Below, in pieces: positions 3,601 to 56,573 of a stretch of 64,000 nt of DNA. The stretch spans positions 29,946,001-30,010,000 of the forward strand of contig NC_047015.1 of the NCBI RefSeq assembly GCF_902652985.1. The letters are read 5' to 3'. How positions within the stretch are numbered: position 1 is the first letter of the stretch; each line of letters opens with the position of its first letter. The notes beneath the pieces are model-generated. The model did no database searches and had not been told where the DNA came from. It worked only from the letters and a program-made list of their open reading frames with translations. Origin of the DNA: Pecten maximus. Lineage: Eukaryota. The position numbers and the translations under genes are program-made.

Positions 3601-6600
3601 AATAAATGTTTGACGTTTTCTTGTTTCTAGATTGAGGATCATTGACCAAATTATTTATCAATTGTACATTTATTAATCATCTTATCATATGTTGTTGTTT
3701 TATTAAAAAGAGAAATCATCAACACAAAAAAAAAAAACAAACAAAAAAAGGATATGATATATGATAAAATGTAACTGGCTGATTCCTTTAACTCCAGGTA
3801 TAACAGACAGGTGTGGTTCCTATGTATGCGGGGCCAGATCACCTTACACGTAATGCTAAAACAAAATTGATCAAAACAGATTTTGATGTCGACAAAAATA
3901 TAATAATCTCGAGCTAGGACAATAAATCGCTTGTCTGTCAATGATAGCATAATGAGGTTGATTACATTTGGCGCATACTTACAAATATTCAAGCTGCAGT
4001 CATAAAAATATCAAACTACATCGACCTCAAAAAATCAAAGTACTTTTCATAGGGTCGAGACGGGGAAACTATTCGCAAATAATACGTAGTTACCTCTTTC
4101 AAAGCAAAAACCATCCAGTGAGATACCTGAGAGAATATATATGTGTTTGGTTTTACAGACAGCATCACAGTCGATACATTTTTCAATGTGCTTCAACACT
4201 ACTTCGGAGGGTATGTATGTACATTTTATTATGAGAATAATTTTCATATCCCTCTTCACACCCCAATCCTAGAACATAACAATGTGTTTTATAGAATGAT
4301 ATACGACAGAAATGCACTGCAGAAACACATGACAATTTTTTCCTCAAAAATACTTACACCATTAAATTAGGGTAAATTGTATTTGATGGTTCTAACAAGA
4401 TGTGTAATTCAGAACTTATTGAAATCACAATTAATCCAAATGCTTTTCGCATACTATTTAGATACGGGCCAAAAACACCCTTACTAAATGGTCTAGTGTT
4501 TGAAGGCGTCCGCGACGAACCGATAAATGTAAGTAGCAGCAATAATTACATTACGACATACATATGTACGGTGTCTACAAACCAAAGGAGGCCAGGAAAT
4601 AGTGGACTTTACATTAGTGACTGTCTATTTACTAAACGAGTTCAATGATCATGTCACAATCCCTAATACTATTACACGAGATTTTAAGAAACACGGTAAA
4701 TCCACGAGTATAAGAGTCTGTTATCATATAAGTCATATATATGTAAGACAAAATTGTCAAATTAATTTCTTTACTCGACTCAGACGGTATTTGTCTCTCT
4801 ACAGAGACATTTGTGCGACGTCATATACAAAATGTATTAATGCTGTGTTGTAATTATGTATATATTGATCACCTTGTTTCTGATTAATTAATGTATACTT
4901 GGCAGGCCATCCCGTGCAGTGCTGCCCAGACGTCGACTCTCCCATTGGTAGACGCTGCCCTTGGGGTCAAACACAAACCAGGTAAATTGTACAGTTCTTA
5001 ACGCACCAGACTCCAATTTAAAAAAAAAAAAACTTATACTCTGGTTTATTTTACCAGCATCTACATCACACGATCTTTCTCGTTTCTCAGTGAGTAATAA
5101 TCCTAACATATCAACATTACTTCATGTGTTACTGTTTAGTTATTACATATAAGTCACTCACTCTAAATTACGTTATTTATGTAAATCACCAATCTATTTA
5201 AAGAATTTGATTATATATACCGAAGTGTTAATGTATTGTATGACATTGCATATATCTTACACATTAATGTTTTTTTTTTTATAATTAACTTATACTCAAT
5301 CAATTGTTTTATAACAAGCTGTCCTGACTGATACTACATGTAATACTCATTTAAATTTTAAACATCTCAGTGTTTTAATTGAGTAAAGAAAAAAAATCGG
5401 TAACGCTTTCCAATGATGTTTCCAAATTTCTTTTAGTCAAGCATTGATGAATCTGAGACTTTTATCAGAAGAGTGAAATTCAAAATAGGAATCAGTACAA
5501 AAATATACTCCCTAACACAAATACCGACGACCATATTAGTGTAGGTTTTGCCCTTAACTCTTCTCATTAAGCTATTTTTTCAAAAAGAAAAAAAAAGTTT
5601 TTATGTCAATACACTGTATCGTTTAATCTCAAAATGAAAGAAAATTCACCTTTAACACTGATAGCATTTCTTTGATCTATATCTAACGTTATTGGAATGA
5701 AATTCTTTTGGTATTCAGCTTATTTGATCCTTTTTAATGATATTATATCTTCCTTAATGTTGCAAACGAAAAAACACACAAATCTATAATAAGATCATTG
5801 AAAAGATTAATTCAAGAATTCATACTTTCTTGAAAGATATAACAAGTTCCAACATTACTGATTCAAGGATACTTTAAACTTGACAATTCTAATAGTCATA
5901 GAAGTTAAAACACTTCACTTCAAACTAGACAATACGGAGAAGAAAAGACACAAACTATGTTATTTTTAATCAGACGATCTTAATAATCAATGGTGACCTA
6001 CGAGGCAATTTCAACTATATGATAGAAAACGGTAATAATACACATTAAGGAGAACTATGGCTTGCCAAGTAAACGATGATGCTATTTCCAAGTGAGTGTA
6101 CATGATTTAAGGACCAATAAAGTCAGATGTTGTTTCAGGTATCCGAGCCAAGTTCGTGCGATTTAGGAAACACATGCCATTACACCATAGGCAGCTTATT
6201 GAGGCTGTTGAACAACGATCACAGATACGTCAGTACGGTAAGTCAGGCCACAGATACACAGGTAAACAACGATCACAGATATGTCAGTACGGTAAGTCAG
6301 CCCACAGATACACAGGTAAACAACGATCACAGATACGTCAGTACGGTAAGTCAGCCCAACAGATACACAGGTAAACAACGATCACAGATACGTCAGTACG
6401 GTAAGTCAGCCCACAGATACACAGGTAAACAGCGATCACAGATATGTCAGTACGGTAACCCAGTCCACAGATACACAGGTAAACAACGATCACAGATACG
6501 TCAGTACGGTAAGTCAGCCCACAGATACACAGGTAAACAACGATAACAGATACGTCAGTACGGTAAGTCAGCCCAACAGATACACAGGTAAACAACGATC

Positions 6601-9600
6601 ACAGATACGTCAGTACGGTAAGTCAGTCCACAGATACACAGGTAAACAACTATCACAGATACGTCAGTACGGTATGTCAGCCCACAGATACACAGGTAAA
6701 CAACGATCACAGATATGTCAGGACGGTAAGTCAGCCCACAGATACACAGGTAAACAACGATCACAGATACACATGTAAACAACGATCACAGATACGTCAG
6801 AACGGTAAGTCAGCCCATAAACAGCGATCACAGATACGTCAGTACGGTAAGTCAGCCCACAAACAACGGTCACAAAACGCCAGTATTGTAATTATAAGTC
6901 AACATACAGGGAAACCGACGAGTTATATCTAAACCTCAGACAGGTTCAAACACTTCATGTAGTTTTTGTTACAACGCAACCTCTATTGTATTATCATATG
7001 TCTTTACCAATTTTCCTAATTTCGATTCTAGACAGTGCAAACGTGTGGCATAGCATCATTGACGACACCTAGAAGGACAAAGTAGTCATGTAACATCTAC
7101 ATGTAATGTTGCTATTCAATTGAATATCTGTTGTCCTCTGTACATGCACATGTGGCATGTTGTCGGTAGACAGGTTCATTCTAGTTGAATACGGATTCCA
7201 AAATACGATATCAAATATTTTATTAAATAATCAATAAATTCCAGCGGTCACTGAATGATACATATTGTTTTACCTTGCAGTGACTGATTGCAACGATGAG
7301 GCTCTGACGTCAGCCTTTGAGAACTGTCTGCGTGAACTGGCTGGCTTCCGAAGTGATCACATCAAAATAGTCACCAAGTAAGTGTGGTTAGCAATATCAG
7401 AAGTCTAAAAGGAACTGTCAGTATGAACAAATAGAGGATACTGAATGGTTTAACGCTGAATATAACCTATATTTAACGAGTATGACAGAGTATGACAGAA
7501 TATCGATAATTTCAGGTGTGCGAAGCACGAGTAAAAAATATCGAAATATGCTGTCATACGAGTGATATCAATGTTATATCCAATGGGAAACCTTCAATTT
7601 TATTGCATTTTTATATTAAAAAAACAAAATTAAAAACAGAATCAGTAACATAATGCATGACGTCACTCCAAGTCATTTTCAAAGGACTGATCAATATAAG
7701 ATTTTTCTGAGAATATGTGCATGAAAAGCTAGTGTCAAATTGGTATTTTGACAAAAAACTAGTCAATTTTTTCAGAAACACAGCAAAATAACCAATGTTT
7801 CTATCTTCGCGTTGATTTGAAAAATCGGCAAATTTCCGTGAGGTGAATACTGAGGTTCACTCTGATTGGCAAAAACGAGTTTGATACATTTCTAAATTTC
7901 ACTGAAAAAAAGCAACAAAGTATTACATAATACCCTGTATTAATGTTTAATCTTAATTTGGTTCGGGTTGTGCAAATTTGCACATTGCTAACATTGTTGA
8001 CATTTAAGACTTCGCTCATACTCTAAATGATGATTCCAGTGGTTCACAATTTATGATAACTGAAATACAAGTTTCTATATTTATCTTGATTCTTTCAATG
8101 GAAGGTGTTCTTTCATATCTTGATGATAGATATTGATGTGTTTATGTTTCGGCTTGAAACAAAATCGCATTCTAATCTACTAATATCCCAATTTAATCAT
8201 CTATTTATTTCACTTCCAAATCCCAATGAACTTTATACTAAGGAAATTAACAATCTGTTTTATGATTTTCTGTGGAATGGTAAACCTGATCCAGTAAAAA
8301 GAGACATAATTACAAAAAAAAGTATGAATAAGGGGGGCTCAAGATACTTCATTTAAAATCTTTCATAACCGCTCTTAAAGCAACTTTGGTCAGACGTATA
8401 TATAATAAAGTAGGAAATTGGGATATTGTTCTAGAATCATTATTAGATAAACAGAAATTACCAAATTTTGGAATTGAATATTTAAATAAGAATAAAAAAA
8501 TTGTAAAAATATATTTTGGAAAGATGTTTTAGACGCCTGGTGTAAGACTCTTAATGCACGCAATATATATAAAACAAACATTCTTGAAAATCAAATATGG
8601 TATAATAGTGAAATCAAAATAGATAAAAAAAACAATTTTAAATAATGCCTGGTTTAAAAAAGGTATATACTTTATTCATAACATCATGAAAACAGATAAA
8701 TTTGTATACACTTTTGAATTAGGACTTAATATAAACAGTCTAAAGAATCATATTAAGTTTGAGTTAAAAGCGCATAAAATTTTAATATCCAAAAGTAACA
8801 TTAAAAACAAAATACATATTGACACACAAATACAACAGTGGCTACAAATTTAAAACAATAATACAAATATACAACATCTCTGACCTAGGTTTATTATGTC
8901 CTTTCTATGTCTGTTTTCAGTTGTTTTTGTACACTCGTTTGTTCCTTTCTTTTTTCTCTCTCTTACTCTTATGTTTGTTTGTTTTGTGTACTTATACTCT
9001 TTTTCACTGACGTAATGCTTTTTGAATAAAGTTTAATAAATTATATAATCTAAAGATCACACAATTGTCTTGGGTAGAGTGTAAGTGTTGATGTATAAAG
9101 CGTGAATTTTTTTGTCCTTACTCATGTATTTTGTATTTGTCATGTATTGTAAACTAAATTTGAAAATGAATAAAATATCAATTAAAAGAAAATCGCATTC
9201 GTACGTCTTACATGTACATAACTACTGGAACATTATACTTCTTCAGTTTAAAAACTAAATTTCCAAACGTGTTTGTATTACAGATATGTGGTGATTCCCG
9301 GCAAGGGTGTTACTCCTGACATAGAAGGTAAGGCAGTCCTTAGCTTTATGCTTAGACGAGATAGAACACAAGCTCAAGTTACAAATGTATACGGTTGATT
9401 GATCTCGGATAACATGGTACATGTACATGTTAATAACTTAATACGCTGATACCGTGTCAGGTGGCACGATCATAGAAGTTCACACACTGAAGCCAGGGGT
9501 GTGGTACTAATGTAGTTCATGTTCGTACAATGTGTACATTGATGTCACGTCACGTGGTAGCAGATCATATATCACGCTGATGTCACGTCACGTGGTAGCA

Positions 9601-24500: not shown

Positions 24501-27500
24501 TACTAACGCATTGACATGTATTCCTGTGCCTTCGTGCACGTGTTGGCAATTCGTTCGTATTATATTTGTTTACTGATGGGTAATAGCCACTATTGCCCTG
24601 TTTAAAGATGGTGTCGGTGATATTTTGATACATGTCTAATCATGGTTTATATTTATACATACATGTATTACACATATATTTGATTGGGACGATTGATCAT
24701 ATGTCCTACAGATGGACTGAGTGCAGACACTTTCTACAATGTGACGAGACCTTTTCTTACGGGGTAAGTGATTCTTCCTTTAGAGTTTGGTTTGGTTTGT
24801 TTTGTTTATTGTCATATTATCAGCCAGGGTCATTTAAGGACGTGCCAGGTTTGGAGGTGGAGGAAAGCCGGAGTACCCGGAGAACCAAACCATCGGCCTA
24901 CGGTCAGTACCTGGTAAATGCTCCACATACATGTTGGTTTCGAACTCGCAACCCAGAGGTGGAGGGCTAGTGATACAGGAGTCCGAATATCCATTTTTTC
25001 CTAACAGAAAGGCAAAATCAATTGTTCATCAAATAAGATATCGATAATTTATACAATGAAAACATCAACAAAGCATAGTATTCGACAAATACCAACAGGG
25101 GCGACTAAATCGCAACCAGCCAGCTTGTGGCCGACTTCACCGAATCAAATACGCTGTTACCTGAATGAGGAATGATACTGTATGCTACGCATCCGGACCT
25201 CCTAGGGGAATTCTTTTGATATATACACATTTTGTTACGTGGAATTCCTCGACATCTTTTAATCTCACTGGGATATAGACCATAATAAATCCTTATTACA
25301 AACTTATAACACTCGCCTAATAACATATGTGATAGATGAAATATTCATGTTATCAAAAATCCTTGTATTAAGTTATAAATCGCTATTCCGAATGCCAAAC
25401 TAACTTTCAAGCTGTTGTGATTTGTACGGTATTATGATTTATTTGTAGATGGGGCGGGGAGAGTTCCCCTTTACCCGTGGGACTAGTGTATGAAGGAGTA
25501 AGTGATGATCCAGTCCAGGTAAGCTAAAATGATTCACATTGCAATGTAGCATAAGGCAGTGATATTGAGCGGGCGTTAAAACAGTCCGTACGATACTGAA
25601 TACATTCATAGAAACAGAAATACGTATTTATGCTTAATAATTTAAACTCACAAATGTAAAATATTATTGCGACAGAATATCTACTTGTAGTGTCAAGAAA
25701 AATTCTATTTAAGACGTTGGAAGCAGTTTGAGATTATTTCAAATCGTGTTCCAGTGATTTCCCCGTTGTGATACTGTTGTGTAAATGACTGTTTTGATTT
25801 GGTTTTACATGATGATATGTACTACAGGTGTATTATATACCTTTACATGATGATATGTACTACAGGTGTATTATATACCTTTACATGATGATATGTACTA
25901 CAGGTGTATTATATACCTTTACACGATGATATGTACTACAGGTGTATTATATACCTTTGCATGATGATATGTACTACAGGTGTATTATACACCTTTACAT
26001 GATGATATGTACTACAGGTGTATTATATACCTTTACATGATGATATGTACTACATGTGTATTATATATGTACCTTACACGATGATATGTACTACAGGTGT
26101 AGTATATAACTTTACGTGATGATATGTACTACAGGTGTATTATATACCTTTTATCCGGTAGATGACCGGAGGAAGTGCCGCCCAGAGTTCTACAATACAA
26201 AGTCTGGACGCTGCCCTCGGGATAACGCACGCGCCCGGTAAGTTGCGAGTGGGGAGGGGTTGCATGTTAAAATGTATCCTCTAAATATGCACTGAAATCA
26301 TTCCCGTACATGTATGCAGGTTTACAATGTCTTTCCTAATTTATTATAATTGTTTTTTACTAAGTGTTATGTATTCTTTGCATGTACATTTAGTTTTTTG
26401 AATATTTACCCATAGTATTTAACAGAGAACAAAATTATCCCGTTTTGAAATATAATGATGTGGTCTCCTTATTATCTGAATTCCTGGGAGAGAATTTTAC
26501 GTACAGTATATATCTTGCGTTTTAATGGATTTTGATCCATTTGTATTGGGTATTTTTAATTGTTAAACATTGATTTGCTTGATTACACTATAAATGTTGA
26601 GTCTACCATTAAAACGCATCAAATATTACCAGTTAGATTCCAGATTGAATCTATTCCCCCACGGAGAAGGGGTGTACTCCCGGACTCCATTCAAGTTATA
26701 TAGGCCTGTTGTATGGAAAACCCGAATTACTGATGTTTCCTCTCCCCAAGAGTATTGGCAAGTTGGTGTTCACTTAACACGAATATGTAAATACGATATT
26801 TGTGTGCAATATTGTAGATGTGCAGGCATTTTTTGACGGAATGAAGCCATATATGCCACGCCCACATCGAAAGTTTTTGGATGATATACGGACAAGGTCA
26901 AGAATCGCAGCTTACGGTCAGTGAATATTCCATCACATCTGTGCGTTAACGTTTACTTTGATCGAAAATGAGTGTCTGACGACAGGTTTGACTGGCTACT
27001 TATGCCCTGTTATTAATTAAAAGATGATGACATTCTCCTTTTTCCTTTTTGAATTTGACGTCCTACACATATAAATTATGATACCTTGGCTGTCTGAAGA
27101 AAACACAGATTTTATGTTAATACACTGCAATAATACCTGAACGAGTTTTATGTTGAAATTGCTACATCATTAGGCAAACGTTTGGTGATCTGAAGACTAA
27201 AGGACATTTTTTATCCTGTATCAAACAAGTTCTAGACGCTAACATTTAAGAAATCTTTGTGAGTTTGATTTCTGTTAATATTTCATATCCTATATCAAGC
27301 TGATATATTCGTCTGATGAGACAAAAACATTTTAATTTCATGGTTGTGAGATATGAACCGTAACCATACATTATTCTAAACTATTCACCGTTTCCAATTG
27401 CCACATAGGAGATTCTAAATTGTAGTCACAGAGGTGTACAAAAACGAGGTTTTTAGGGAAAAACAGCTCATTGTGCTCCAAATACGACAAATGTCAGTTT

Positions 27501-30500
27501 AAAAAGGAAAATCTGTGAAACTTTGTTCAAGATTTCAAGATATATTTATTCAACTCAGGTGCACTATTGATCGCAGCAAGAAGTCATGCATTTACAAAAA
27601 AATATCATACAATTTAATTGTCACCATCATCTTCTGAATGATTTGGTATTTCCGACAATATCATAGTCTTTCAGTTATATCTATACAGAAATAGTAAGAC
27701 ATAATTATCATCATATCACCTTATTTATTGAATATACCTAAACCTCGTGTATATATCTATACGTACAATGAGTACATAAGTTTAAAGTTATTCATAGTCA
27801 TAGGTCTACATGACATATAGATATGTACAGATATAGTTAGACAGAGGTTTTTCCTTTTTTTATCATTATCTAACCGTATTAGCAGTATTACATAAAATTA
27901 TGCAAACTTTACACATGGCGAAAAAACAATGATAAAACCAATATATAATACGTCTAAGTAAAGTATATCCAATGTAATTCTTCTTCTTCTAATATTGTTA
28001 AGTAATATAATGCTTCTATTTTTTCCAAAAATGTTTGACAAAACTTCAACATTGCATATGATACAAAGGCCGTACATTTTGTTCATATTAGGGTAAGAAC
28101 AGTGATTATAAGAAATATTTTTGTCAAAATTGTTTAACAGTTGCATGTTAACATTGGAAAAGATTGAAAAGATAATGATAAGTATCGCCAATGTCATGAA
28201 AACAAAGATTGCAAATTCTATTTTATTTTGGAATCTTTATACATCTCCCTGTTTCTATTGGTAAATACATATTAGATGTTTCAAACTTTGGATTGTCTTT
28301 CTATTGGTTTCAGCTTTAATAGGTATTTTTAAGAATTTGTTTTGAAAATAGATAAGGTACGTCCTCTTGAGGAGCTCTCAATATTGTTAAATCCTTTCTG
28401 GATAAACTGATCTTGTAATGTTAGTTTGTTAATAATTTCTATTAAATGTACTTTTTTTTTTTTTTTTTTTAATTCCAAATGAAATTTAAACCAGTTTCTG
28501 TTAATATATCAAAAACATTCTTTAACGGTTTGAACTCCCTTGTTCCATTTGTTTGTAAATTACACATTCAGCTACACATATCACTCGACAGATTATAACA
28601 CTATAGCAATTTACACCAAAACATAATTCTGCTTTTAGCTTCAATATATATATATAAAGGGGATAGCCCGGTCTCCCCATACATCATGAAGTTCGGTGTG
28701 CTTCTTCTAACATTTAATATACATTTGCAAAATTGCAAATGTACTTTTTCAACAGCACTTAAAGTTTCATTGTCCTATATTTCTACAGAAAAAAGTATTG
28801 ATACCACAAGAGAATAAAAAACATGTACATTATTGTATCTTTAACTGAAGGTCTACAAGTAAAGAATATATCTGATTTTTTTTATAAACAGCATGCATCC
28901 AGTATCCAATCATTACAATATATTTCAAATGCCCTAATAAGAGCATATCGGAGTCATTCAGCCGAATCGGACATAACGATAATATCATAATCATAGAGAA
29001 TTATAATCAACTTTAAGTACTTTTCTTGGCTTTCACTCACATTTTGTACTGTTTGTAAACAATTAACACCTTTTTCTGTAAAAAAATTCTTCACTTCTAG
29101 ATCATTTAGGTATATGGCATACAAAAATGGTGATAGTATTCTGAATTTACCATTAAGAACTATATGTATGAGCGTAAAAGGACCTTAACATGTCGTTGAG
29201 ATTCGTGTGCTATATGAAAAGTACAAACGAATAGATATGAAAAGTACAAACGAATTGTATTTGGAGCGCCAACGACTCTTCCTTACATGACCTCGTTTAT
29301 ACCAATGTGCTTTCAATTTAGAAATCTCACTTAATAAGGGGGGAAAGTCATCATATAAAATCATATTGAATTGTATTCCCGTGACTCCAGTACTTACTGA
29401 ATTTTTGTGTAATATCTACATGAGGTTACATCTAAAAAAAAATATTTTTTTTTGTATTTTTAGTCCGTTCAAGTTCGAATCAGGATGTGAACGACGCCTA
29501 CAATGACTGTATCACGTCTTTAGTGGACTTCCGTAGTTATCACATACAGATTGTCACCAAGTAGGTAACATACAGATTGTCACCAAGTAGGTAACATACA
29601 GATTGTCACCAAGTAGGTATCACATACAGATTGTCACCAAGTAGGTAACATACAGATTGTCACCAAGTAGGTATCACATACAGATTGTCACCAAGTAGGT
29701 ATCACATACAGATTGTCACCAAGTAGGTATCACATACAGATTGTCACCAAGAAGGTATCACATACAGATTGTCACCAAGTAGGTATCACATACAGATTGT
29801 CACCAAGTAGGTATCACATACAGATTGTCACCAAGTAGTTATCACATACAGATTGTCACCAAGTAGGTATCACATACAGATTGTCACCAAGTAGGTATCA
29901 CATACAGATTGTCACCAAGTAGGTATCACATACAGATTGTCACCAAGTAGGTATCACATACAGATTGTCACCAAGTAGGTATCACATACAGATTGTCACC
30001 AAGTAGGTATCACATACAGATTGTCACCAAGTAGGTATCACATACAGATTGTCACCAAGTAGGTATCACATACAGATTGTCACCAAGTAGGTATCACATA
30101 CAGATTGTCACCAAGTAGGTAACATACAGATTGTCACCAAGTAGGTATCACATACAGATTGTCACCAAGTAGGTATCACATACAGATTGTCACCAAGTAG
30201 GTATCACATACAGATTGTCACCAAGTAGGTATCACATACAGATTGTCACCAAGTAGGTATCACATACAGATTGTCACCAAGTAGGTATCACATACAGATT
30301 GTCACCAAGTAGGTATCACATACAGATTGTCACCAAGTAGGTATCACATACAGATTGTCACCAAGTAGGTATCACATACAGATTGTCACCAAGTAGGTAT
30401 CACATACAGATTGTCACCAAGTAGGTATCACATACAGATTGTCACCAAGTAGGTATCACATACAGATTGTCACCAAGTAGGTAACATACAGATTGTCACC

Positions 30501-33500
30501 AAGTAGGTATCACATACAGATTGTCATCAAGTAGGTATCACATACAGATTGTCACCAAGTAGGTAACATACAGATTGTCACAAAGTTGGTATCACATACA
30601 GATTGTCACCAAGTAGGTATCACATACAGATTGTCACCAAGTAGGTATCACATACAGATTGTCACCAAATAGGTAACATATAGATTGTCACCAAGTAGGT
30701 ATCACATACAGATTGTCACCAAGTTGGTATCACATACAGATTGTCACCAAGTAGGTACACTACAGCTTACGTGGACTTTGCGGTTTCCACGCGTCCGTCA
30801 CGGACGTGGGCATCGCGGACCCCACTCGCCCACCGGATATGGCATTCCGCGACGTTCCGTCATATATCGTGGACATCAGCTGACTGATACGGTATCCACT
30901 CGGCATCACGGTATGTGACGATCCGCGATTAGTGGTGGGCATAGTTCAACTCGAGACACCGTGTTCCACGACGATCCACGATACGTGGTGGACATGCATT
31001 TCATTTTAAAGCCCGTGGTCCATGTCGATCCGCGATATACAGTGGGTACAAGTTGTTTGCTGTTCATTTCTGATCTACACGAGTTATATCCCTTCGTCTT
31101 TCGGTAGCGGTAGTGGTATCGGTATCGTTTATCAGAATTATGCATGGTTCCATGTTGGCGGTGTAGATAAGCCTTTATGATTCGGATGAAATTGAAGAAC
31201 ATTTCAAGTTTTATTTAAAGCTTTAGACCCTTGGTCCATCAATAGCGTTATTATGGCCATATTATAAACATTAAAAAACAATCGCAATATATTAAGCACC
31301 GTTAATATTTAATGTAACTTAACATAAGCTGTTTCACCCATCCAGCATTCGCCATTGACGTATTCACGTTTTTAAAAAATATTCATTTATTTTAGAAATA
31401 TTGCATTCAGTACACGACATTGAATTGGGAAAATAGAAAAAAACCACTGCGACATAAGAACAGCTTTACCAAATCTCATCAAAATATCTAAACTTCGGCA
31501 TTTGAATCATTATTCCGTTATCTTTTAAACATCGGTGTTATCATGTTATCAGACTCCGACCATATTAAAATATGCGGAATATCGAATGTTGTGACAACTA
31601 GTTGTATATCTATTCTAAAGTGTACACACAAAAGAGCTGTAAATAACTGCCTATCTGGGTATCTTGTATACATGTAATATCGTCAATGTGGTATCTAAAC
31701 GGAAAACACAGACATGAATTAAACATTACATTATTGCATCAAAAGCAGAATGGATTCAGAATGTAATTAAAACATTACTACGGCCCTTTCTGCAATATAA
31801 TTTACATGTACAATGTTTATATACATTCCCTAAATGTACCGATTTATGATAACCATTTAATGTCTTTATATTTATCATGTATATTGAGTGCTTTGCATTC
31901 TGGTCCAATTATGGTTTCTGTTTCTATCACCACTGTGATTTCAATGATTTGTATTCAATCATATTTTAAGTCATAAATTACTCATTGAATGCAACACTTT
32001 TTATGCGGTGTTTTGCATAAACATGGCAGCCATAACCGCTGATTTTCTCGGCAGCTCGTCACACGCAGATGATTCTATTTTAGCTGTCTTGTCAATCAAA
32101 CGGGGTATCTGACGGCATCCGTGAGTTTCATTGGTTAGTGAGAATGATTGACAAGACACTAAAGCTTGTTACACTCCAGTGATCTCTGACTCTGTCAATC
32201 AAACACTGTAGAAAGGCGTCCGTTAATTCCATTGGTTGGTGAGAATGATCGACAAGTCAGCGTACGTGCACATGTTTTGTCGTCAGCTGTAATAGCAGAC
32301 GTAAAACCCGTTAAATAAATATTGAGAAATATTATCAAAAACTGTATCGATACATACCGTCAAAACTGATTATCTACCGGTTTTAATAGCCTATATAGGG
32401 ATATATTCCGCACAGTGACCTCACGTGTGAGGTTCGCCCAGAGACCGTATTTGAGTCATTGCATTAATAGTCTATTAAAAGTTTATTCTAGAGATGCTAA
32501 TATTTTAGGCAACGATGTTGCACGATTTGTGATATTCTGTTCCGACTCATCCACTCATCGGTTTTGGGTTACATTTCATTTGTTGGAGAGCTCGAGCTAA
32601 ATTATTGAAGATAGGAAAGTCTCAATGCACCTTCGATATCAGAGACGGGAATCGGTTGATCTGTGGAATAAACAATAAAAAAAAGTCCTGTCCTAGGACT
32701 GGTCATGATAATGTTATATGAATATCTACACGTAGAAACACGAACTGAGATACATCCGAGTCCGTTTTATAACCGACGAGTGGCCAACACCACAAAGGCC
32801 AGAGACCGGCAAGCCGCGGTCACAGAGGCGTGTTAAGATAATAGCCCGGTAAATACCACATCTTAATTATCTCTTAACTCTAACATGTTGAATTTACCTG
32901 TAGGGCAGTTTGTTTTGATAATGATTATATAAAAGGACTCCCAATGCCAAGAAGTGGATCCTTAACTGTAGGTAAATTTAATTCATTTATTCCTTTGGCG
33001 TTTCTACCAATCTGATTTTACAACATATACAAAGACATATACATGTACATTAGCAATACAAGATCGTGATATCACAGGTTCAACGGGATCAGACCGCTAT
33101 TTAGGAAATATATATAAACAAATGTAAACAGGTGCCTGCAATTAATGCGAATAAGACAACGATAATGCAAATGTAACATTTGGTATAATGTTCTATTATA
33201 ACGGGCCGTATACAACATGTCACAACTATATAATGTTCTGTTTTAACGGACCGTATATAACATGTAACCTCCCACTAAATATGTATTATAACGGGCCGTA
33301 AATCATATGTAACCTTTGAGCAATATTCTATTATAACGGGCCGTATAAAACATGTAACATCTCACTAAATGTCTATTAAAACGGACCATATATAACATGT
33401 AACATTTATATAACGCTCTAATATAACGGGCCGTATACAACATGTCACAATTATATCATGTTCTGTTTTAACGGACCGTATATAACATGTAACCTCCCAC

Positions 33501-36500
33501 TAAATATGTATTATAACGGGCCGTAAATCATATGTAACATTTGAGCAATATTCTATTATAACGGGCCGTATAAAACATGTAACATCTCACTAAATGTCTA
33601 TTAAAACGGACCATATATAACATGGAACATTTATATAACGCTCTATTATAACGGGCCGTATACAACATGTCACAATTATATAATGTTCTGTTTTAACGGA
33701 CCGTATATAACATGTAACTTCCCACTAAATATGTATTATAACGGGCCGTAAATCATATGTAACATTTGAGCAATATTCTATTATAACGGGCCGTATAAAA
33801 CATGTAACATCTCACTAAATGTCTATTAAAACGGACCATAGATAACATGTAACATTTATATAACGTTCTATTTAGTGTTATAACGGCACGTCTATAACAT
33901 GTCACAATTATATAATGTTCTGTGTTAACGGGCTGTATATAACATGTAACTTCTTACTAATTTTCTTTTATAATGGACCGTATATGGCATATGGCATTTG
34001 AATAATGTTCTATTTTAACGGGCGATATATAACATAACTTGTTACTAATTTTCTATTATACGGGCCGTATACAACATGTCACAATTATATTATATTCTGT
34101 TTTAACGGGCCGTATATAACATACATATTCTTACTAATTTTCTTTCATAATGGGCCGTATATGACATATGACACTTGAATAATGTTCTATTTTAACGGGC
34201 CATATATAGCAAGTAACTTCTTACTAATTTTCTATTATAACGGGCCATATACAACATGTCACAATTATATTATGTTCTGTTTTAACAGCCTGTATATAAC
34301 ATGTAAATTTTGAGCAATATTCTATTAAAACGGGCCGTATACAACATGCAACATCTCACTAATTTTCTATTATAACGGGCCGTTTATAACATGTCACAAT
34401 ATATAATGTTCTCTTTTAACGGGCCGTATAAAACATGTGATGCTGATGTAACCTCTTACTAATTTTCTATTATATCGGGCAGTATACAGCATGTAACATT
34501 TGAATAATGTTCTATCATAACGGGCCGTATACAACATGTAACATCTCACTAATTTTCTATTAAAACGGGCCCTATATAACATGTCACAATTATATAATGT
34601 TCTATTTTAACGGGCCGTTTATAACATGTAACTTCTTACTACGAACCTCACCTTACGACCACCTCAAAATTACGACCACCCCGCTATTACGGGCACTTTT
34701 TTTCAGTCCCGATTTTTTTCTCTATATATCTTTGTATTGGTCGCTTCACTATTACGACCACTTTGCTATTCCGTATTACGACCACCTTGGGCAGTCCCAA
34801 CGAATACTAATTAACGCTTATTACCCCCACAATTACGACCAGTTGGTCGTGTCTAAAAAATTACCTGGTGTGTAGCGAACCGTGAACAGCTTACGGTAAT
34901 GCGTGTCAAACTGGCCATTGACGTGTGTATACGTAATTATCGATCTTTTGTTTACTGACCAGTGTATCGACAGGTGAGTAGAATGGCTATTAATCTCTTT
35001 GAAATCTTCGCACTGACCGGAAGGTAAAATAAACATCCAGTCTTTCATTGTTCGTGACAAGCCAACATGTGCCGGGTTTTAGTTTGTAGTCCTTTGTTTA
35101 CCGTTACGGGTGATCGCCCTTCCTCGGTGGCGCTGTGACGGATTAAATACACAAGTGATCAGATTATCTATCTTGCCTTGAAAATTGTAATAACCGTACA
35201 TTTGCTTATTAATTATGGTATTCAAATAATTGATTTGTGGCTGTTGGTCGTTTTAAGACCCGATTACATACAAGCGAGTAAAATAAACATAGTAACGTTT
35301 GATTTTTTTCTGGTCAAGCGCAAGTTTTTTCAGCGATCTCGATGTTTTTGTATCAATGCCGAATAGGGTCTGTAGATAGGTGTTATTATAATTTAAAAAA
35401 AAAAAACATGTTTGGTTTCAAATATTTCGCTAGAATTATGCTATTCTTTCTAACTTCATTTCTTTTTTCGCTCATGATGGCCACATCACGTAAACGTAAC
35501 GAGTTATCACTAAAAAAGAAAATTGAACTGATTCAATGTAGCAATGGTCGTAGTCAACGACAACTTGCTGAACAGTTTGGGGTCGGCAAAACACAGGTCA
35601 GAGCATCTTGAAAAGAAAGACAGAAATTTTAGAAGGTTATGAAGAAAATAAAGGAAATGATAGACAAAAACAATTGTCTTTGTTTTTATTTAAAGTTAAG
35701 ACTATGGCATGTATTTAGCCAAATCTATACAACTTGCACCTGAGTTCAGTCAATTAAGAGTTACGGTTCCTGATGGTCTAGCTCAAATTGGTCCACCTTG
35801 GCACTTTGACCCGGACCCCCAGGTGTTCCTAATAGTGAGGTTTCACTGTAATTTTCTTTTATAACGGGCCGTATACAGCATGTAACATCTCACTGAATGT
35901 CTATTATAACGGGCCATATAACATTTAACTTCTTACTAATTTTCTACTATACTGGTGTAATGGGCCGTATACAACATGTAACATTTGAATAATTTTCTAT
36001 TTCAACGGGCCATGAAACATGTAACTTACTACTTTTCTTTTATTACGGGCCGTATACAACATATATAACGTGTAACGACTTACATCACCCTGTTCATAGC
36101 CTTTATTACGAGGACACGGGTTTCGTTGCATACCAATAACGATTTCGATTACAACACTTCTAATAATACAAGTTTAAAATGGAATTCGTACATGAAATAA
36201 ATGCTTAAAGTAAAGTTTCAACATCGTGGGTATGTGAATGTTCAAACTTAGGCTAATTATTTTATTTGTGATACGAATGTTTATTGTTTTAACTCAACGG
36301 AATTTAAATGTAAATAATGTGTTTAATTTAAAAATGAATCCCTACAGTAAAAAGAAATTTTTAACAAAACTCAAGCTAAATATACGTACAACCTGTAAAA
36401 GCATATATTCGGAACATTTTTGACGTGCACGGAAACCATACGTGTCAACTCACCAGCAGTTATAGGCGGGTTCCGATTAGAACACCCGACAGAACAGATA

Positions 36501-39500
36501 CCTGTGGTGCTGTGACAGGCGTGACGACCGTGTCGACCGTAATTTCACACCTGATTATTGTTAAATGGTATACTAACCCACTCACAGTCGAGTACACTTT
36601 TATGTCTGTATGATTTGTAATCAGTTAAGTTAAATAATATCAAGAAAAATATCAGTGATAGTTCGCCATGTTGATAAGGGTTATCGGATAGTAGTAAATG
36701 GTCTGATGTGATTTTGTTTCGCATTTTCAATCATTTAAAACAGTAAAATATCTACGTTGTTGTACTATAGCTGTCTTCTGCAAATTTGGTTTATGAAAAT
36801 GGTATGCAAAATTATTAATAAGGAATGAAATGAGATGAATTCAAAGTTCGTGTAAAATAGAGGTAAATATCATGTAATGTCGGAGAATACAGATAAGATA
36901 CATGTAATTTTGGAGAACACAGGTAAAATCCAGGTAAGGTATAGGTGAAGACTATAATGACTGTCACAACATACCTGCCCGTAACTTATTTGTAAGAAGT
37001 GGGAGAAAGGAGACCCCCCCCCCCCCCCCCCGCCGCGGTAATCGATTTTTCTTACCTTGTGGGTCAGTCACCCGTGTCGACAGATTCACAGCTCTAGATC
37101 GTTTGTCACACCAAGTCGTCATAGCAACCGCTGCGAGGCCTTAGCCCCAGGCATTTACCCGTTCAACTCAGTTTTTGTAACGGTATTTTGCTTTCCTATA
37201 CAGCGAATTAATTAATGATTATAGACTGGTCTTGCTTTTGTTTCAAACTTAAAGCAGATGATAACTATGATATCAACAAATTTTATTCCGTAGTTATTAC
37301 GTGAGAACCCATAAACCAACATACATAATGTACGTAACCAAAATATGATTATTATTGATCAGATCATAAGTAATATACGGAAAGAATATCTGTAATATAG
37401 TTCACACTTAATGAAATTTAGATATATATATTTTTTTAAATAGAAGGTGCTTCACACAGACATGGGCTCGTAAAGATGACACATTAAAAGAATTTATCCT
37501 ATAACACAGTATCAACTGATATAAGCACATCGTTTACTTTGCGTTTTAACTTCTGTAACATAAAATACATTAATACAATGGTGTACACGCAAATTACATA
37601 AAAGATATTTACTAGTGTTAATATGAGATTAATAGATTATTTACAATTAAAATAATTATGTTATATACGGCCCGTTACTAAAAGAAATTAGTGAGATGTT
37701 ACATGTTGTATACGGCCCGTTATAATAGAGCATTATTGAAATATTACATGTTATATACGGCCCGTTACTAAAGAAAATTAATGAGATGTTACATGTTGTA
37801 TACGGCCCGTTATAATAGAGCATTATTCAAATATTACATGTTATATACGGCCCTTTACTAAAGAAAATTAATGAGATGTTACATGTTGTATACGGCCCGT
37901 TATAATAGAGCATTATTCAAATATTACATGTTATATACGGCCCGTTACTAAAGAAAATTAATGAGATGTTACATGTTGTATATGGCCCGTTATAATAGAG
38001 CATTATTCAAATATTACATGTTATATACGGCCCGTTACTAAAGAAAATTAATGAGATGTTACATGTTGTATACGGCCCGTTATAATAGAGCATTATTCAA
38101 ATATTACATGTTATATACGGCCCGTTACTAAAGAAAATTAATGAAATGTTACATGTTGTATACGGCCCGTTATAATAGAGCATTATTCAAATATTACATT
38201 ACCAGTGAAACGGAAGGGAAGTAACTCTTATATATCGTTAGGCCATCCTGCCTTCGGCCGTGATTAGGAGACGCGGTAAAGTAAGCATAACTTCAAAACA
38301 TAAGCTAGCCACGCTATCTAGCGTTCCACGACGGATCGCGCTGTTCCGTGGACATACACGCCTTCCGGCGGGCCACGATATCCAGTGTTCCTCGACGGGC
38401 CGCGCTGTTGCGTGGACACCCACGGTATCTGCCGATCCATCACGAATCGCGGAATAACGTGGACACTTTGCCCACGCATGTCCACTAGTGGACATTGCGT
38501 GGGCAGTCCACCGTGGGCGCGTGGAAACCGCAAAGTCCACGTAAGCTGTAGTGTATCACATACAGATTGTCACCAAGTAGGTATCACATACAGATTGTCA
38601 CCGAGTAGGTATCACATACAGATTGTCACCAAGTAGGCATCACATACAGATTGTCACCAAGTAGTTATCACATACAGATTGTCACCAAGTAGGTATCACA
38701 TACAGATTGTCACCAAGTAGGTAACATACAGATTGTCACCAAGTAGTTATCACATACAGATTGTCACCAAGTAGGTATCAAATACAGATTGTCACCAAGT
38801 ACACATACAGATTGTCACCAAGTAGGTATCACATACAGATTGTCACCAAGTAGGTATCACATACAGATTGTTACTGACAAATATATATGTAGTGCCTCAC
38901 AGTAACGGCAGTAACGTGTTTGTAGGGTAATATCATACCTTTCCTTTTGTGTCGTCAAGCTTCCCGACAGGAGACCTACATGTCAGTTTCCTGCAATATT
39001 TAGAGATATGAAAGTGTCATGGCATAGGAACTCAACAGGTTAGCTATCTGGTTGATGGAGTACATGTAATAATCTGTATTTGATTCCTATGTTGATGTTT
39101 GTTGTGTACGGGTCTCCCCCTACACATTTTCCAGGATGTGATTACATATCACTAGTTTCCTTTCATTTAAATATATAATTGGCTCGCGTTCCTGTTTAAG
39201 GAACGTAATAATAAGGGAACGGATGGCTCCGACATCTTGGCATTGTATTCTTGTATTATAGGTACATAATTGTTGCATCCAGCAAGAAGAGACAAGAAGA
39301 GGAAAAATACCAATCTGTGTCTAAAAAAGGAACGGGCGGTTCTAGTGAGTATAGAATGATATGTGGTACATTATGACTCCTCCCCTTGTAGAAGTAGTGT
39401 TGTCCATTTATGGAAACTAAGATGACCAAAGTAATTTTGCCACCGCAATTGGAACATTTTGATCGAATATCTTTCTGCTTCCAAAGTACCAAACACTTCT

Positions 39501-39960
39501 ATAACATCTTTGTCGTCTACGTTGGTATTACTGGCTTTGGTCTCTGATATGAGTGTCCTCCCGAGACAGGTCACGAGTTCTCGCTCAGACAAACATCCAA
39601 GTTTAGAAAATCGGTATTTCTTGTTCTATTTAACGTTCAATAATAAGTTGTCGGTAAGGATTAGTAATTTTGATATGATCAGACAGGGTATCACGCTAAG
39701 GTGTATATTTACAGGTCATTCATACTTCGTACATTATTGTATTAATTAGCTTTGGCAATGATGATAAACCACAAACGGGTACACGTTTTATGCGGTATAT
39801 AAATGAAACTTCTCGGTATCTAAAATGTTTCAGATTCTCGTCGTTTGGAATTCTATAGTTGGCTTCTGTAGAAATAGATCTGTTGATAACTGTTACAGGT
39901 ATACTGCCATTCCTGAAGAGCTCCAGGGATACTACAAAGCGTATGAACGAGTCCATGTGA
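21562..39960 (+). CDS. IDO: Indoleamine 2,3-dioxygenase (gene B; canonical, IDO2-like pocket), 14 coding exons, 398 aa
   Basis: Exons: 21562-21645 (MDSARSSPASLSDYHIDPHVGFLLKEAL), 21936-22037 (EVLPEYFHVWNHL..), 22377-22496 (GHRQLRLAHLQLSVLVNGYVWQ), 23242-23360 (PILSHCDVVLANW), 23645-23659 (15-nt microexon), 23986-24085 (PGGDEAAWFFKATVGVELA), 24214-24331, 24712-24763 (FYNVTRPFLTG), 25449-25518 (W..GLVYEGV), 26162-26237 (GGSAAQSSTIQSLDAALGITH), 26818-26916 (MKPYMPRPHRKFL), 29464-29560 (AYNDCITSLVDFRSYHIQIVTK), 39262-39344 (YII..KGTGGS), 39899-39960 (ILPFLKSSRDTT..*). Total 1197 nt, all GT-AG, in frame. Confidence 0.95.
24785..24975 (-). mobile_element. SINE copy (same family as 18156-18369) in gene B intron 8
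   Basis: Reverse-complement match including the B box, core and gtttg tail. Confidence 0.85.
25806..26150. repeat. 38-bp minisatellite (~9 copies) ending ~11 nt before the gene B exon-10 acceptor
   Basis: Unit tacatgatgatatgtactacaggtgtattatatacctt. Confidence 0.95.
27525..29140 (-). mobile_element. Highly decayed non-LTR retrotransposon 3' fragment (RTEX-like) in gene B intron 11
   Basis: Minus-strand remnants ILSPFLYAIYLNDL (RT) and HLQFCKCILNVRRSTPNFMMYGETG; many frameshifts; short (ttcaaga) repeat at the presumed tail. Clade assignment is inference. Confidence 0.7.
29533..30757 (+). repeat. 28-bp minisatellite, left part (~44 copies), built from the gene B exon-12 end plus splice donor
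   Basis: Unit gtaggtatcacatacagattgtcaccaa (with a 26-bp variant lacking 'tc'). The first copy is exonic (S-Y-H-I-Q-I-V-T-K). Confidence 0.97.
33170..34641 (+). repeat. 45-bp satellite; the first part is a 5-monomer, 225-bp higher-order repeat x3
   Basis: Core tctattataacgggccgtatacaacatgtaac; cores at 33201, 33246, 33291, 33336, 33381, 33426; HOR starts at 33201, 33426, 33651. Confidence 0.92.
34642..35848 (+). mobile_element. Pogo/Tigger-like deletion derivative nested in the 45-bp satellite
   Basis: TA duplication (34640-34641, 35849-35850) interrupting a satellite unit. The right end reads cagtgaaacctcacta.. in reverse complement; the left end is eroded (cgaacctcacctt..). Remnant CENP-B-type HTH: MATSRKRNELSLKKKIELIQCSNGRSQRQLAEQFGVGKTQV/ILKRKTEILEGYEEN at ~35477-35650. 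Confidence 0.85.
35849..36070 (+). repeat. Continuation of the 45-bp satellite after the pogo insertion
   Basis: Same ataacgggccgtatacaacatgtaac core, ~5 copies. Confidence 0.9.
37655..38200 (-). repeat. 45-bp satellite in inverted orientation, 90-bp dimeric higher-order repeat x6
   Basis: tacggcccgttataatagag at 37711, 37801, 37891, 37981 (variant), 38071 and 38161; this is the reverse complement of the 33-36 kb core. Confidence 0.95.
38554..38871 (+). repeat. 28-bp splice-donor minisatellite, right part (~11 copies)
   Basis: Same unit as 29533-30757, resuming in register after the transposon. Confidence 0.97.
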
Positions 39961-55747: not shown

Positions 55748-56573
55748 TGCCAATTATCCGGATGCTCTGATTTTATAAAAGATATAAAGTATTTCTCAGT
55801 ACTTCGTGATGTTCTAATTAAGGCATATTATTATTTGTTTGAATATCTTATTGATTTATTGATTGATTGATCTATTGTCAATGTTAAGAAAATTTGTTAA
55901 TTTTAATGTATTTTGTATCGTCTTTAAGTTCTAAAATGATATGTATTTATATAAGGCAATAATTGAATTACTGGTAAATGTGTACAAAATGTAATAATAG
56001 ATAAACTAAGGACCCTCGATTTCGGCAAATACCCGTAGGTCGACCGGGTAGAAAAAAAAGATGGCTATGGGCTTCGGCATTAACACTTGATATGATACTG
56101 TATTGACCTCAAATTGTATATCATGATCCGCCACTCGGCCAATGATACATCTGTACATTGCCAGATACCTTACTGATATGCGAACATCATTATTTTAATA
56201 GGTACAAATGATCTTACTAAGAGTTGTATTTTTATAGTGATTAGTAAAACGACAGCTGATTATACAGGACACAAAACCGTCTAGCTTCAGGTGATGAGGC
56301 AGACACCATAATTATTCACCTCAGGAAGTACATCCCATAGGTGATTTCCGATGCCATTAAGAAAATGGACAATTCATTTAATGCATTTGATGAAGGCATA
56401 TACATAATTAATCACATCCATAATGGACTCGGCTGGACCGACTCTCACTCAGTATCCTTCGTGAACTGGCGGCCAAAGACAAGATGGCCGCCTACCAGTT
56501 TTCTGTGTAATTCCTACAGGCTTCCAGGCTAAAGGACCAACTTACAAACTGTTTTCTGATAACTTTCAGTCAA

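What the first reader, a model, noticed from the sequence alone, without database searches (positions are those of the whole stretch)
29533..38871. About 55 tandem copies of the heme-His codon plus splice donor after gene B exon 12; every downstream donor is a poison choice
Seen: the 28-bp unit is the exon-12 end (tatcacatacagattgtcaccaa = Y-H-I-Q-I-V-T-K, containing the proximal His) plus the donor gtagg. Reading past the first donor gives AAG TAG, so use of any downstream donor creates a stop at 29562-29564 and removes the GTGG exon. The likely seed is visible: exonic gtagtta (29533) resembles donor gtaggta (29561) exactly 28 nt away. The exon-type variant 'gtagttatcac' recurs inside the array (29835, 38661, 38743), implying exchange between the coding copy and the array. 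Inference: the spliceosome must choose 1 of ~55 near-identical donors; array length could act as an NMD-coupled expression rheostat, and the essential His codon is exposed to conversion from array variants.
Basis: partly seen in the sequence, partly recalled or inferred. Interest (0 to 1): 0.8.

Follow-up and report, generated by a model that had tools for sequence, protein, structure and literature searches.

The report
Splice-donor minisatellite in scallop IDO intron
One intron of a king-scallop IDO (heme dioxygenase) gene starts with about 55 tandem copies of the preceding exon's end plus its splice signal. The assembled mRNA from three RNA studies is still spliced at the first copy, so this is a large but ordinary example of a repeat type already known from human genes and lancelets.

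Summary
The 28-bp unit is the last 23 nt of exon 12 of an IDO paralog (Y-H-I-Q-I-V-T-K, carrying the heme-ligand His) plus the donor GTAGG. There are 55 donor positions, and 44 are exact copies of CACCAA|GTAGGT. Reading past the first donor gives AAG TAG.

The array is not continuous. It is 1.2 kb and 0.32 kb of one array, split by a young 7,796-bp non-autonomous transposon with CACTA-type ends.

The strong interpretation is not supported. RNA contigs from three studies join exon 11 to exon 12, then leave exon 12 at 29560 and continue directly into exon 13. So the first donor is the one used, although 11 donor positions (6 of them exact copies) lie only 0.4-0.7 kb from the acceptor. Array RNA is present at about 3-5% per copy of the exon level, which fits pre-mRNA. 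Minor use of downstream donors cannot be excluded.

DNA of another animal shows array words at about 20-fold single-copy depth, so the array is not an assembly artefact.

The kind is known: human F7, CBS, IFI6-16, LMNB2 and PDGF, and lancelet "mirages". In F7 the most upstream donor always wins.

This scan has already noted many such arrays elsewhere in this genome. Three of the five clustered IDO paralogs carry independent ones. Modest interest.

The parts
29464..29560 (+). Exon 12 of IDO paralog 'gene B'. It ends ...F-R-S-Y-H-I-Q-I-V-T-K(AA), and the His codon is at 29541-29543.
   Evidence: Pfam PF01231 positions 327-354. PDB IDO1 and IDO2 alignments. RNA contigs join 26915 to 29463/4 with GT..AG ends and leave at 29560.
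29561..29566 (+). Authentic 5' splice site, CAA|GTAGGT. It is the first of 55 donor positions and the one used.
   Evidence: Loose ends behind 29563 in X6, X8 and X9 read CATAATTGTTGCATCCAGCAAGAAGAGACA, which is window 39265-39294. The letters GTA are shared by the intron start and the exon 13 start.
29562..29564 (+). In-frame TAG that any mRNA made with a downstream donor would contain.
   Evidence: Read directly: ACC AAG TAG.
29561..30757 (+). Left block of the 28-bp array, with 43 downstream donor positions. It includes long runs of identical units.
   Evidence: TRF. Unit-by-unit parse. 31-mers of the pure unit occur about 33 times in the reference.
30758..38553 (.). 7,796-bp non-autonomous TIR transposon inserted into one array unit. 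It has perfect 36-nt TIRs (30758-30793 and 38518-38553) starting CACTACAG, TA on both sides, internal inverted 45-bp arrays, and no ORF of 100 aa or more apart from a 100-aa GTG frame at 38238-38540 that runs into the right end and was not scanned.
   Evidence: At least 124 candidate copies in the genome; the 40 scored are all 99% identical or more over the first 202 nt.
38554..38871 (+). Right block of the same array, with 11 donor positions. It is more degenerate and ends in a partial unit.
38872..39261 (+). Remaining unique part of intron 12 (390 nt) with the acceptor tattatAG. This is probably close to the ancestral intron length.
39262..39344 (+). Exon 13, (K)YIIVASSKKRQEEEKYQSVSKKGTGGS.
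   Evidence: The first 33 nt are confirmed as the sequence joined to exon 12 in RNA contigs.
39899..39959 (+). Coding part of the last exon (ILPFLKSSRDTTKRMNESM, stop TGA), followed by the 3' UTR.
26162..26236 (+). Exon 10 (GGSAAQSS motif).
   Evidence: Joint 26236 to 26817 in three RNA runs. Sequence.
26817..26915 (+). Exon 11.
   Evidence: Joints 26236 to 26817 and 26915 to 29463. Pfam IDO 290-316.
6211..6770 (+). Same phenomenon in the neighbouring paralog, gene A. A 54-bp array x10 starts in the last 27 nt of its exon 11 and repeats GGTAAG donors.
   Evidence: The exon matches Pfam IDO 295-320.

Best explanation
This is a boundary-spanning ('mirage'-type) minisatellite, and it is a tolerated by-product rather than a regulatory device.

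Inferred steps:
- A slippage or unequal-exchange event between GTAGTTA (in exon 12) and GTAGGTA (the donor), 28 nt apart, duplicated the last 23 nt of exon 12 plus 5 nt of the donor.
- The array then grew to more than 50 units by the usual minisatellite turnover. The left block has long runs of identical units; the right end is degenerate.
- A member of a very young, high-copy, non-autonomous family with CACTA-type ends later inserted at a TA inside one unit. Together these changes stretched an intron of about 0.4 kb to 9.7 kb.

Shown: splicing is unaffected in the dominant mRNA. The spliceosome pairs exon 12's own, most upstream donor with the exon 13 acceptor, and the 54 downstream copies leave with the intron.

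Inferred by analogy with human F7: the first donor wins because the 5' splice site is chosen in the 5'-to-3' direction from the upstream acceptor (exon definition, or 'oriented scanning'). Identical sites further downstream therefore do not compete, even those that lie 25 times closer to the acceptor. Occasional use of the next one or two donors, followed by NMD, is possible but minor.
For: Array anatomy and the exact identity of the unit with the exon end plus donor.

Exon identity as the IDO heme-ligand exon.

The homologous boundaries of two paralogs have no such array and lack the GTAG microhomology, so the array arose after gene B diverged.

Near-identical copies of the unit occur only at this locus.

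TE: perfect 36-nt TIRs, TA flanks, no ORF of 100 aa or more except a 100-aa GTG frame overlapping the right terminal region (not scanned), and at least 40 copies 99% identical or more.

RNA contigs of three studies (X6 796 nt, X8 1,514 nt, X9) show the joints 26236>26817 and 26915>29463. They then continue from 29560 straight into exon 13 letters. Four 31-mers link the exon-specific T at 29537 to exon 13-specific letters, so the contig path is specific to the first donor.

The pure-unit contig in RNA has word depth 24.9 (X6) and 12.1 (X8), spread over about 33 genomic copies, against 13.9 and 10.6 for the mRNA contig. That is about 5% and 3.5% per copy.

Independent DNA (X4) shows array bins at 232-353 against about 18 for unique sequence.

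No special RNA structure hides the sites (z = -0.5).

Precedents: F7 IVS7, CBS, IFI 6-16, LMNB2 and PDGF (PMC1557585; CBS unit c.1444_1467+7, PMC2630376), and lancelet mirages that do not disturb splicing (PMC3087553, PMC3902484).
Against: All RNA evidence comes from de Bruijn contigs, which drop rare isoforms and NMD-depleted ones. Low-level use of downstream donors is therefore not excluded. In IFI 6-16 and CBS, the two nearest pseudo-sites are used in addition to the authentic donor.

The seeding event and the order of events are inferences.

Copy-number variation between animals was not measured.

The clustering of such arrays at donors in this gene cluster (3 of about 10 arrays, against about 0.3 expected) suggests that something more than neutral chance acts on where they form.
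Confidence: 0.8

Rival explanations
1. NMD-coupled rheostat. A fraction of transcripts use downstream donors, acquire the TAG and are degraded, so array length tunes IDO output.
For: Every downstream donor gives a TAG more than 50 nt upstream of the last exon junction. 43 downstream sites are identical to the real one over 12 nt. In CBS and IFI 6-16 the two nearest pseudo-sites are used, and the CBS VNTR has been associated with lower enzyme activity (title of Lievers 2001, cited in PMC2630376; the paper itself is not held). Array words are present in RNA libraries.
Against: The dominant mRNA in three studies uses the first donor. The array signal in RNA is only about 3-5% per copy, which is the level expected for pre-mRNA or DNA carry-over. 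In F7, identical downstream sites do not compete at all, whatever their number. No data link copy number to expression.
Confidence: 0.08
2. The array has a positive role as a cluster of U1-binding sites. It would help commit exon 12, or protect the TE-laden 9.7-kb intron from premature cleavage and polyadenylation.
For: There are 46 intact GTAGGT sites. The intron holds a 7.8-kb AT-rich transposon. The idea rests on general knowledge of U1 telescripting, not on any test done here.
Against: The array predates the transposon, because the TE sits inside a unit. Paralogs do without it. Similar arrays are scattered over many genes of this genome according to earlier notes of this scan, which fits a mutational by-product. 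Nothing here shows constraint.
Confidence: 0.04
3. Assembly artefact: the long array is a collapsed or inflated product of long-read assembly.
For: Arrays of near-identical 28-mers are hard to assemble. Exact copy number is unverified.
Against: DNA contigs of a different sample (X4) cover the junction from exon 12 into the array. They show array words at about 13-20 times single-copy depth, close to the reference multiplicity. The array has an ordered internal variant structure and a clean TE insertion with TA flanks.
Confidence: 0.01
4. Gene B is a decaying pseudogene, and the array and the TE are symptoms of lost constraint.
For: There is a large insertion and a repeat in the intron right after the catalytic His exon.
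Against: A 1.5-kb spliced mRNA contig is assembled in RNA libraries of three studies, with canonical GT..AG joints. Exons 10-14 are open and match IDO. The exon copy of the repeated 28 nt shows no listed difference in the four other data sets (X9 and X4 each cover the place with one low-depth contig).
Confidence: 0.02
5. The array does not derive from the exon. It comes from a dispersed TE-borne 26-bp satellite (C9, C6, C8) that resembles it, or else that satellite derives from an IDO exon-end array.
For: The 26-bp unit AAGTAGATCACATCGACCTAGTCACC matches the 28-bp unit at 19 of 26 positions and the gene A exon end at 22 of 26. In frame it reads D-H-I-D-L-V-T-K plus GTA.
Against: The 28-bp unit is identical to 23 nt of a coding sequence fixed by a conserved protein motif. 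No IDO exon flanks the 26-bp arrays, and all IDO genes lie on C1. By my estimate, a 19/26 match to some satellite family in a 918-Mb repeat-rich genome is expected by chance, and the extra matches to gene A have p of about 0.1.
Confidence: 0.03

Closest known systems
Human F7 intron 7 37-bp VNTR (Borensztajn et al. 2006, PMC1557585)
   Same: The first monomer of the minisatellite spans the exon-intron boundary, so the authentic donor is followed by identical pseudo-donors. Only the most upstream site is used, and no special RNA structure explains it.
   Different: F7 has 5-9 units of 37 bp (4 nt of exon plus 33 nt of intron). Here there are about 55 units of 28 bp (23 nt of exon plus 5 nt of intron), split by a 7.8-kb transposon, in a mollusc. 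In F7 the rule was shown by 50 minigene constructs; here it rests only on RNA contigs.
Human CBS 31-bp VNTR, c.1444_1467+7(16_21) (PMC2630376; Lievers 2001)
   Same: The unit geometry is almost identical: the last 24 nt of the exon plus the first 7 nt of the intron. It is the precedent for the 'repeat number lowers activity' idea.
   Different: [quoted passage not shown] Length polymorphism and a phenotype association are documented there but not here.
Human IFI 6-16 intron 2, LMNB2 and PDGF minisatellites (listed in PMC1557585)
   Same: [quoted passage not shown] IFI 6-16 has 25 pseudo-sites, the largest number cited there.
   Different: The units are 81-100 bp in PDGF and LMNB2. IFI 6-16 constitutively uses the two nearest pseudo-sites. 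The scallop array has about twice as many sites as IFI 6-16.
Lancelet 'mirage' minisatellites (Adh3, globins, TnC, PGBD5; PMC3087553, PMC3902484)
   Same: They are tandem repeats spanning exon-intron boundaries in an invertebrate with a repeat-rich, polymorphic genome. They recur in several genes, and regular splicing is not disturbed.
   Different: Lancelet units are 10-160 bp with few copies (3-6 in the globins), and they also occur at acceptor boundaries. Here there is a very long donor-side array. The phylum differs (Mollusca).

Membership tests
Boundary-spanning ('mirage') minisatellite | Head-to-tail tandem array of a 10-160-bp unit | tested here: met
   28-bp unit, 44.6 plus 11.8 copies, 96% and 91% matches.
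Boundary-spanning ('mirage') minisatellite | The first monomer spans an exon-intron boundary, so the splice site is reiterated in the intron | tested here: met
   The unit is the last 23 nt of exon 12 plus GTAGG. The exon boundary is fixed by RNA joints and IDO homology. There are 55 donor positions, 44 of them exact.
Boundary-spanning ('mirage') minisatellite | The regular mRNA is still made from the authentic (most upstream) site | tested here: met
   RNA contigs of three studies go from 29560 directly into exon 13. Minor isoforms cannot be seen in contigs.
Boundary-spanning ('mirage') minisatellite | Length instability or polymorphism between alleles | not testable with these tools
   Only word depth in one other animal is available (about 13-20 times single copy). 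No long reads could be laid.
IDO family (Pfam PF01231), host gene | Exons match the IDO profile in order, including the heme-ligand His stretch | tested here: met
   Exon-by-exon hits at profile positions 51-88, 93-133, 172-220, 255-281, 290-320 and 323-360. RSYH aligns to IDO1 and IDO2 chains. The exons were not joined.
CACTA / CMC-type DNA transposon (the inserted element) | TIRs beginning CACTA and subterminal repeat arrays | tested here: met
   Perfect 36-nt TIRs starting CACTACAG, and inverted 45-bp arrays near both ends.
CACTA / CMC-type DNA transposon (the inserted element) | 3-bp target-site duplication and a CMC transposase | tested here: not met
   The flanks show TA (2 bp, palindromic, so it could also belong to the TIR). 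No ORF of 100 aa or more apart from a 100-aa GTG frame in the right terminal region, which was not scanned. I therefore call it a non-autonomous TIR element with CACTA-type ends and leave the superfamily open.

The most novel reading that the evidence does not exclude
In this scallop, splice donors may be preferred seeding points for minisatellites, through a mutational process tied to the donor sequence or to splicing and transcription. This array would then be one product of a genome-wide mechanism rather than an accident.

In the five-gene IDO cluster alone, three paralogs carry independent boundary-spanning arrays at three non-homologous donors: gene B exon 12, gene A exon 11, and an N-terminal exon of paralog 3. 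That is 3 of about 10 arrays where about 0.3 would be expected. Earlier notes of this scan report the same excess elsewhere in the genome.

A by-product reading is that the locus is a natural 55-site test. It shows that the 'most upstream donor wins' rule holds in a mollusc even against identical donors 25 times nearer the acceptor.
Probability: 0.3. Interest if true: 0.6.

Novelty: new member of a known kind. Interest (0 to 1): 0.3.

Why it matters
On its own it is a large but ordinary example. It shows that a gene can carry 54 decoys of its own splice donor, each of them lethal to the message, together with a 7.8-kb transposon, and still make normal mRNA.

Its value is as a natural experiment on 5' splice-site choice. 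The authentic site, 9.7 kb from the acceptor, beats identical sites 0.4-0.7 kb from it, which extends the F7 'most upstream site' rule to a lophotrochozoan.

It is also one more data point for the unusual frequency of donor-seeded minisatellites in the king-scallop genome. If that frequency is mechanistic, it would bear on how minisatellites and perhaps new introns arise.

Tried and rejected
1. Laying exons 12 and 13 in one stretch was not possible: they are 9.7 kb apart and the limit is 6,000 letters. I read the junction from loose ends instead.

2. I laid only the first five units (26140-29720). This avoided handing the reads tool a long repeat. The TE junctions and the right block were therefore not checked in independent DNA.

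3. RNA secondary structure that might mask the downstream donors: none found (z = -0.5).

4. A link to the 26-bp satellite on C9, C6 and C8: there is no IDO exon beside it, the flanks are TE-like and shared between loci, and the similarity is within chance by my estimate.

5. A search for further IDO genes or His exons elsewhere in the genome found only the C1 cluster.

6. The exons were searched one by one.

7. The big protein searches were not used. The family was clear from Pfam, and fetching orthologues that way was outside the operators' guidance, so there is no sister-species comparison.

8. Lievers 2001 (CBS VNTR) is not held in the library. Only its title and secondary citations are used.
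Full report
**What is there**

The window is C1:29,946,001-30,010,000 of a 918-Mb assembly.

Gene B is one of five clustered IDO (indoleamine 2,3-dioxygenase, Pfam PF01231) paralogs on C1 between 29.875 and 29.976 Mb. They match the IDO profile in order.

Exon 12 (29464-29560) ends F-R-S-Y-H-I-Q-I-V-T-K. It aligns with the RSYH stretch of human IDO1 and IDO2 chains. From established knowledge of IDO1, this His is the proximal heme ligand (His346).

Exon 13 (39262-39344) carries K-K-G-T-G-G-S. The last exon ends at a TGA at 39957-39959.

**The array**

Tandem Repeats Finder reports a 28-bp unit, GTAGGTATCACATACAGATTGTCACCAA:
- 44.6 copies at 29533-30765, 96% matches
- 11.8 copies at 38548-38871, 91% matches

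Unit-by-unit parsing gives 55 donor positions:
- 44 are exact CACCAA|GTAGGT, including the authentic one at 29561.
- 2 keep GTAGGT with an exon-side change.
- 9 have an altered hexamer: GTAGTT x3, GTTGGT x2, GAAGGT, ATAGGT, GTAGGC and GTACAC.
- Nine units are a 26-bp variant, including the first two intronic units.

The unit is the last 23 nt of the exon plus GTAGG, and reading through gives AAG TAG.

Near-identical copies of the unit (94% or more) exist only at this locus.

**The interruption**

The array is not continuous. At 30758-38553 sits a 7,796-bp element with these features:
- perfect 36-nt terminal inverted repeats starting CACTACAG
- TA on both sides
- inverted 45-bp internal arrays
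- no ORF of 100 aa or more apart from one 100-aa GTG frame that overlaps the right terminal region and was not scanned

Its first 202 nt have at least 124 candidate copies in the genome. The 40 that were scored are all 99% identical or more. It is therefore a young, high-copy, non-autonomous family.

The element lies inside a unit, so the array is older than the insertion. Without the array (1,197 + 318 nt) and the element, intron 12 would be about 390 nt instead of 9,701 nt.

**Which donor is used**

I laid Logan contigs of three RNA data sets from three studies (X6, X8, X9) and one DNA data set from another animal (X4) on 26140-29720.

The RNA contigs (796 nt, 1,514 nt, and 631 + 172 nt) show two GT..AG joints:
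- 26236>26817 in all three runs
- 26915>29463 in X6 and X8

In all three runs they leave the stretch at 29563. The loose letters read CATAATTGTTGCATCCAGCAAGAAGAGACA, which is window 39265-39294. GTA is common to the intron start and the exon 13 start, so the only cut with GT..AG ends is 29560|39262.

Each contig carries the exon-specific T at 29537 within 31 nt of exon 13-specific letters. The junction therefore comes from the first donor, not from an array copy.

The gene is thus expressed and correctly spliced in the dominant mRNA.

No listed difference falls in the 28 repeated exon letters in any of the four data sets (X9 and X4 each cover the place with one low-depth contig, X4 ending at 29562). 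Two exon SNPs lie outside them: 29502 A>C (Asn to His) and 29528 C>T (synonymous).

**How much array is in RNA**

The RNA libraries also hold the 58-nt 'cycle' contig of the pure unit. Its 31-mers occur about 33 times in the reference.

| Run | Word depth, cycle contig | Word depth, mRNA contig | Array signal per copy |
|---|---|---|---|
| X6 | 24.9 | 13.9 | about 5% |
| X8 | 12.1 | 10.6 | about 3.5% |

This level is compatible with pre-mRNA or DNA carry-over. It bounds steady-state use of downstream donors but cannot exclude it.

**Is the array real**

In the independent DNA run X4, unique sequence has word depth of about 18 and the array bins have 232-353. One X4 contig runs from the upstream intron through exon 12 to the first letters of the array.

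Together with the ordered variant structure and the clean TE insertion, this rules out an assembly artefact. The exact copy number remains unverified.

**Mechanism**

The arrangement is a documented kind.

Borensztajn et al. [quoted passage not shown]
- F7: 5-9 units of 37 bp
- CBS: 15-20 units
- IFI 6-16: 25 pseudo-sites
- LMNB2 and PDGF

With 50 F7 constructs they show that the identical downstream sites are functional but never compete with the most upstream one ('oriented scanning'). They found no masking RNA structure.

The CBS unit is c.1444_1467+7, that is 24 nt of exon plus 7 nt of intron (PMC2630376). This is nearly the geometry seen here.

In lancelets the same structures are called 'mirages' and do not disturb splicing (PMC3087553, PMC3902484).

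The scallop locus behaves as these precedents predict. The first donor, 9.7 kb from the acceptor, is used although 11 donor positions (6 of them exact copies) lie 0.4-0.7 kb from it. Folding exon 12 plus four units gives no unusual structure (z = -0.5).

That the first donor wins by 5'-to-3' choice from the upstream acceptor is an inference by analogy. It was not tested here.

**Origin**

GTAGTTA (29533) and GTAGGTA (29561) lie 28 nt apart. This microhomology is specific to gene B. The homologous boundaries of gene A and paralog 3 read differently and carry no array. A slippage seed is therefore plausible but not demonstrable.

The three GTAGTT units (one on the left, two on the right) can be explained in three ways: one G-to-T change that then spread, conversion from the exon, or an old variant. 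I estimate about an 11% chance that one of about 10 variant types would recreate the exon letter. 'Exchange' is therefore not implied.

**Context**

The phenomenon recurs in this gene cluster:
- Gene A has a 54-bp array starting in the last 27 nt of its exon 11.
- Paralog 3 has a 48-bp array x7.9 starting 12 nt inside an N-terminal IDO exon.
- Paralog 1 has a 149-copy 26-bp array holding CAG|GTCAGT, about 57 nt after a donor.

That makes three of about ten arrays spanning a donor, where about 0.3 would be expected. This count is post hoc.

The scan's earlier notes list many such arrays in other windows of the same genome, and some report a donor excess. I did not test that claim beyond this cluster.

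**Verdict**

The donors are real decoys and all are poisonous, but the cell uses the first one. The rheostat and conversion ideas have no support here.

It is a new and unusually large member of a known kind. Interest is modest.

Noticed in passing
L019:2813-3274 (G000:C1:29921812-29922273): IDO paralog 3 has a 48-bp array x7.9 whose first unit starts 12 nt inside an N-terminal exon (…REHVDQ|gtatat). This is a third independent boundary-spanning array in the five-gene cluster, at a non-homologous junction.
   Followed up: partly
window 6211-6770: Gene A exon 11 ends in a 54-bp array x10 built of two 27-nt sub-repeats, each ending in GGTAA. This gives about 20 donor-like sites after the real one.
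   Followed up: partly
L017:5283-9139 (G000:C1:29877282-29881138): IDO paralog 1 carries a 149-copy 26-bp array (unit CAGGTCAGTATTTACAATACTTGGGT, with a good CAG|GTCAGT donor match). It starts about 57 nt downstream of a real donor and is not clearly derived from the exon.
   Followed up: no
window 25804-26151: A 38-bp array x9 ends about 10 nt before the acceptor of gene B exon 10. The branch point and pyrimidine tract must therefore lie in its last unit, and each unit holds tactacAG|G. RNA contigs still use the proper acceptor.
   Followed up: partly
L011:1875-7163, L012:2233-3681, L013:2188-2801 (C9:44.656 Mb, C6:46.755 Mb, C8:3.36 Mb): A dispersed 26-bp satellite (203, 56 and 24 copies) has homologous TE-like flanks. 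Its unit matches the 28-bp unit at 19 of 26 positions and the gene A His-exon end at 22 of 26, and reads D-H-I-D-L-V-T-K plus GTA. It may be chance (my estimate p about 0.1), or it may be a mobilised exon-end array.
   Followed up: partly
window 30758-38553: The inserted TIR element belongs to a family with at least 124 candidate copies, of which the 40 scored are 99% identical or more. It carries two internal satellite arrays in inverted orientation (33171-34632 and 37658-38199). The family has been active very recently.
   Followed up: partly
window 29502 and 29528: There are two exon 12 polymorphisms. 29502 A>C (Asn to His) is seen in RNA runs X6 and X8 and in DNA run X4. 29528 C>T (synonymous) is seen in X6 and X8.
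   Followed up: no
window 56511-57422 and 58707-59069: Long open frames with the look of a seven-transmembrane receptor lie downstream of the IDO cluster. They were not examined.
   Followed up: no
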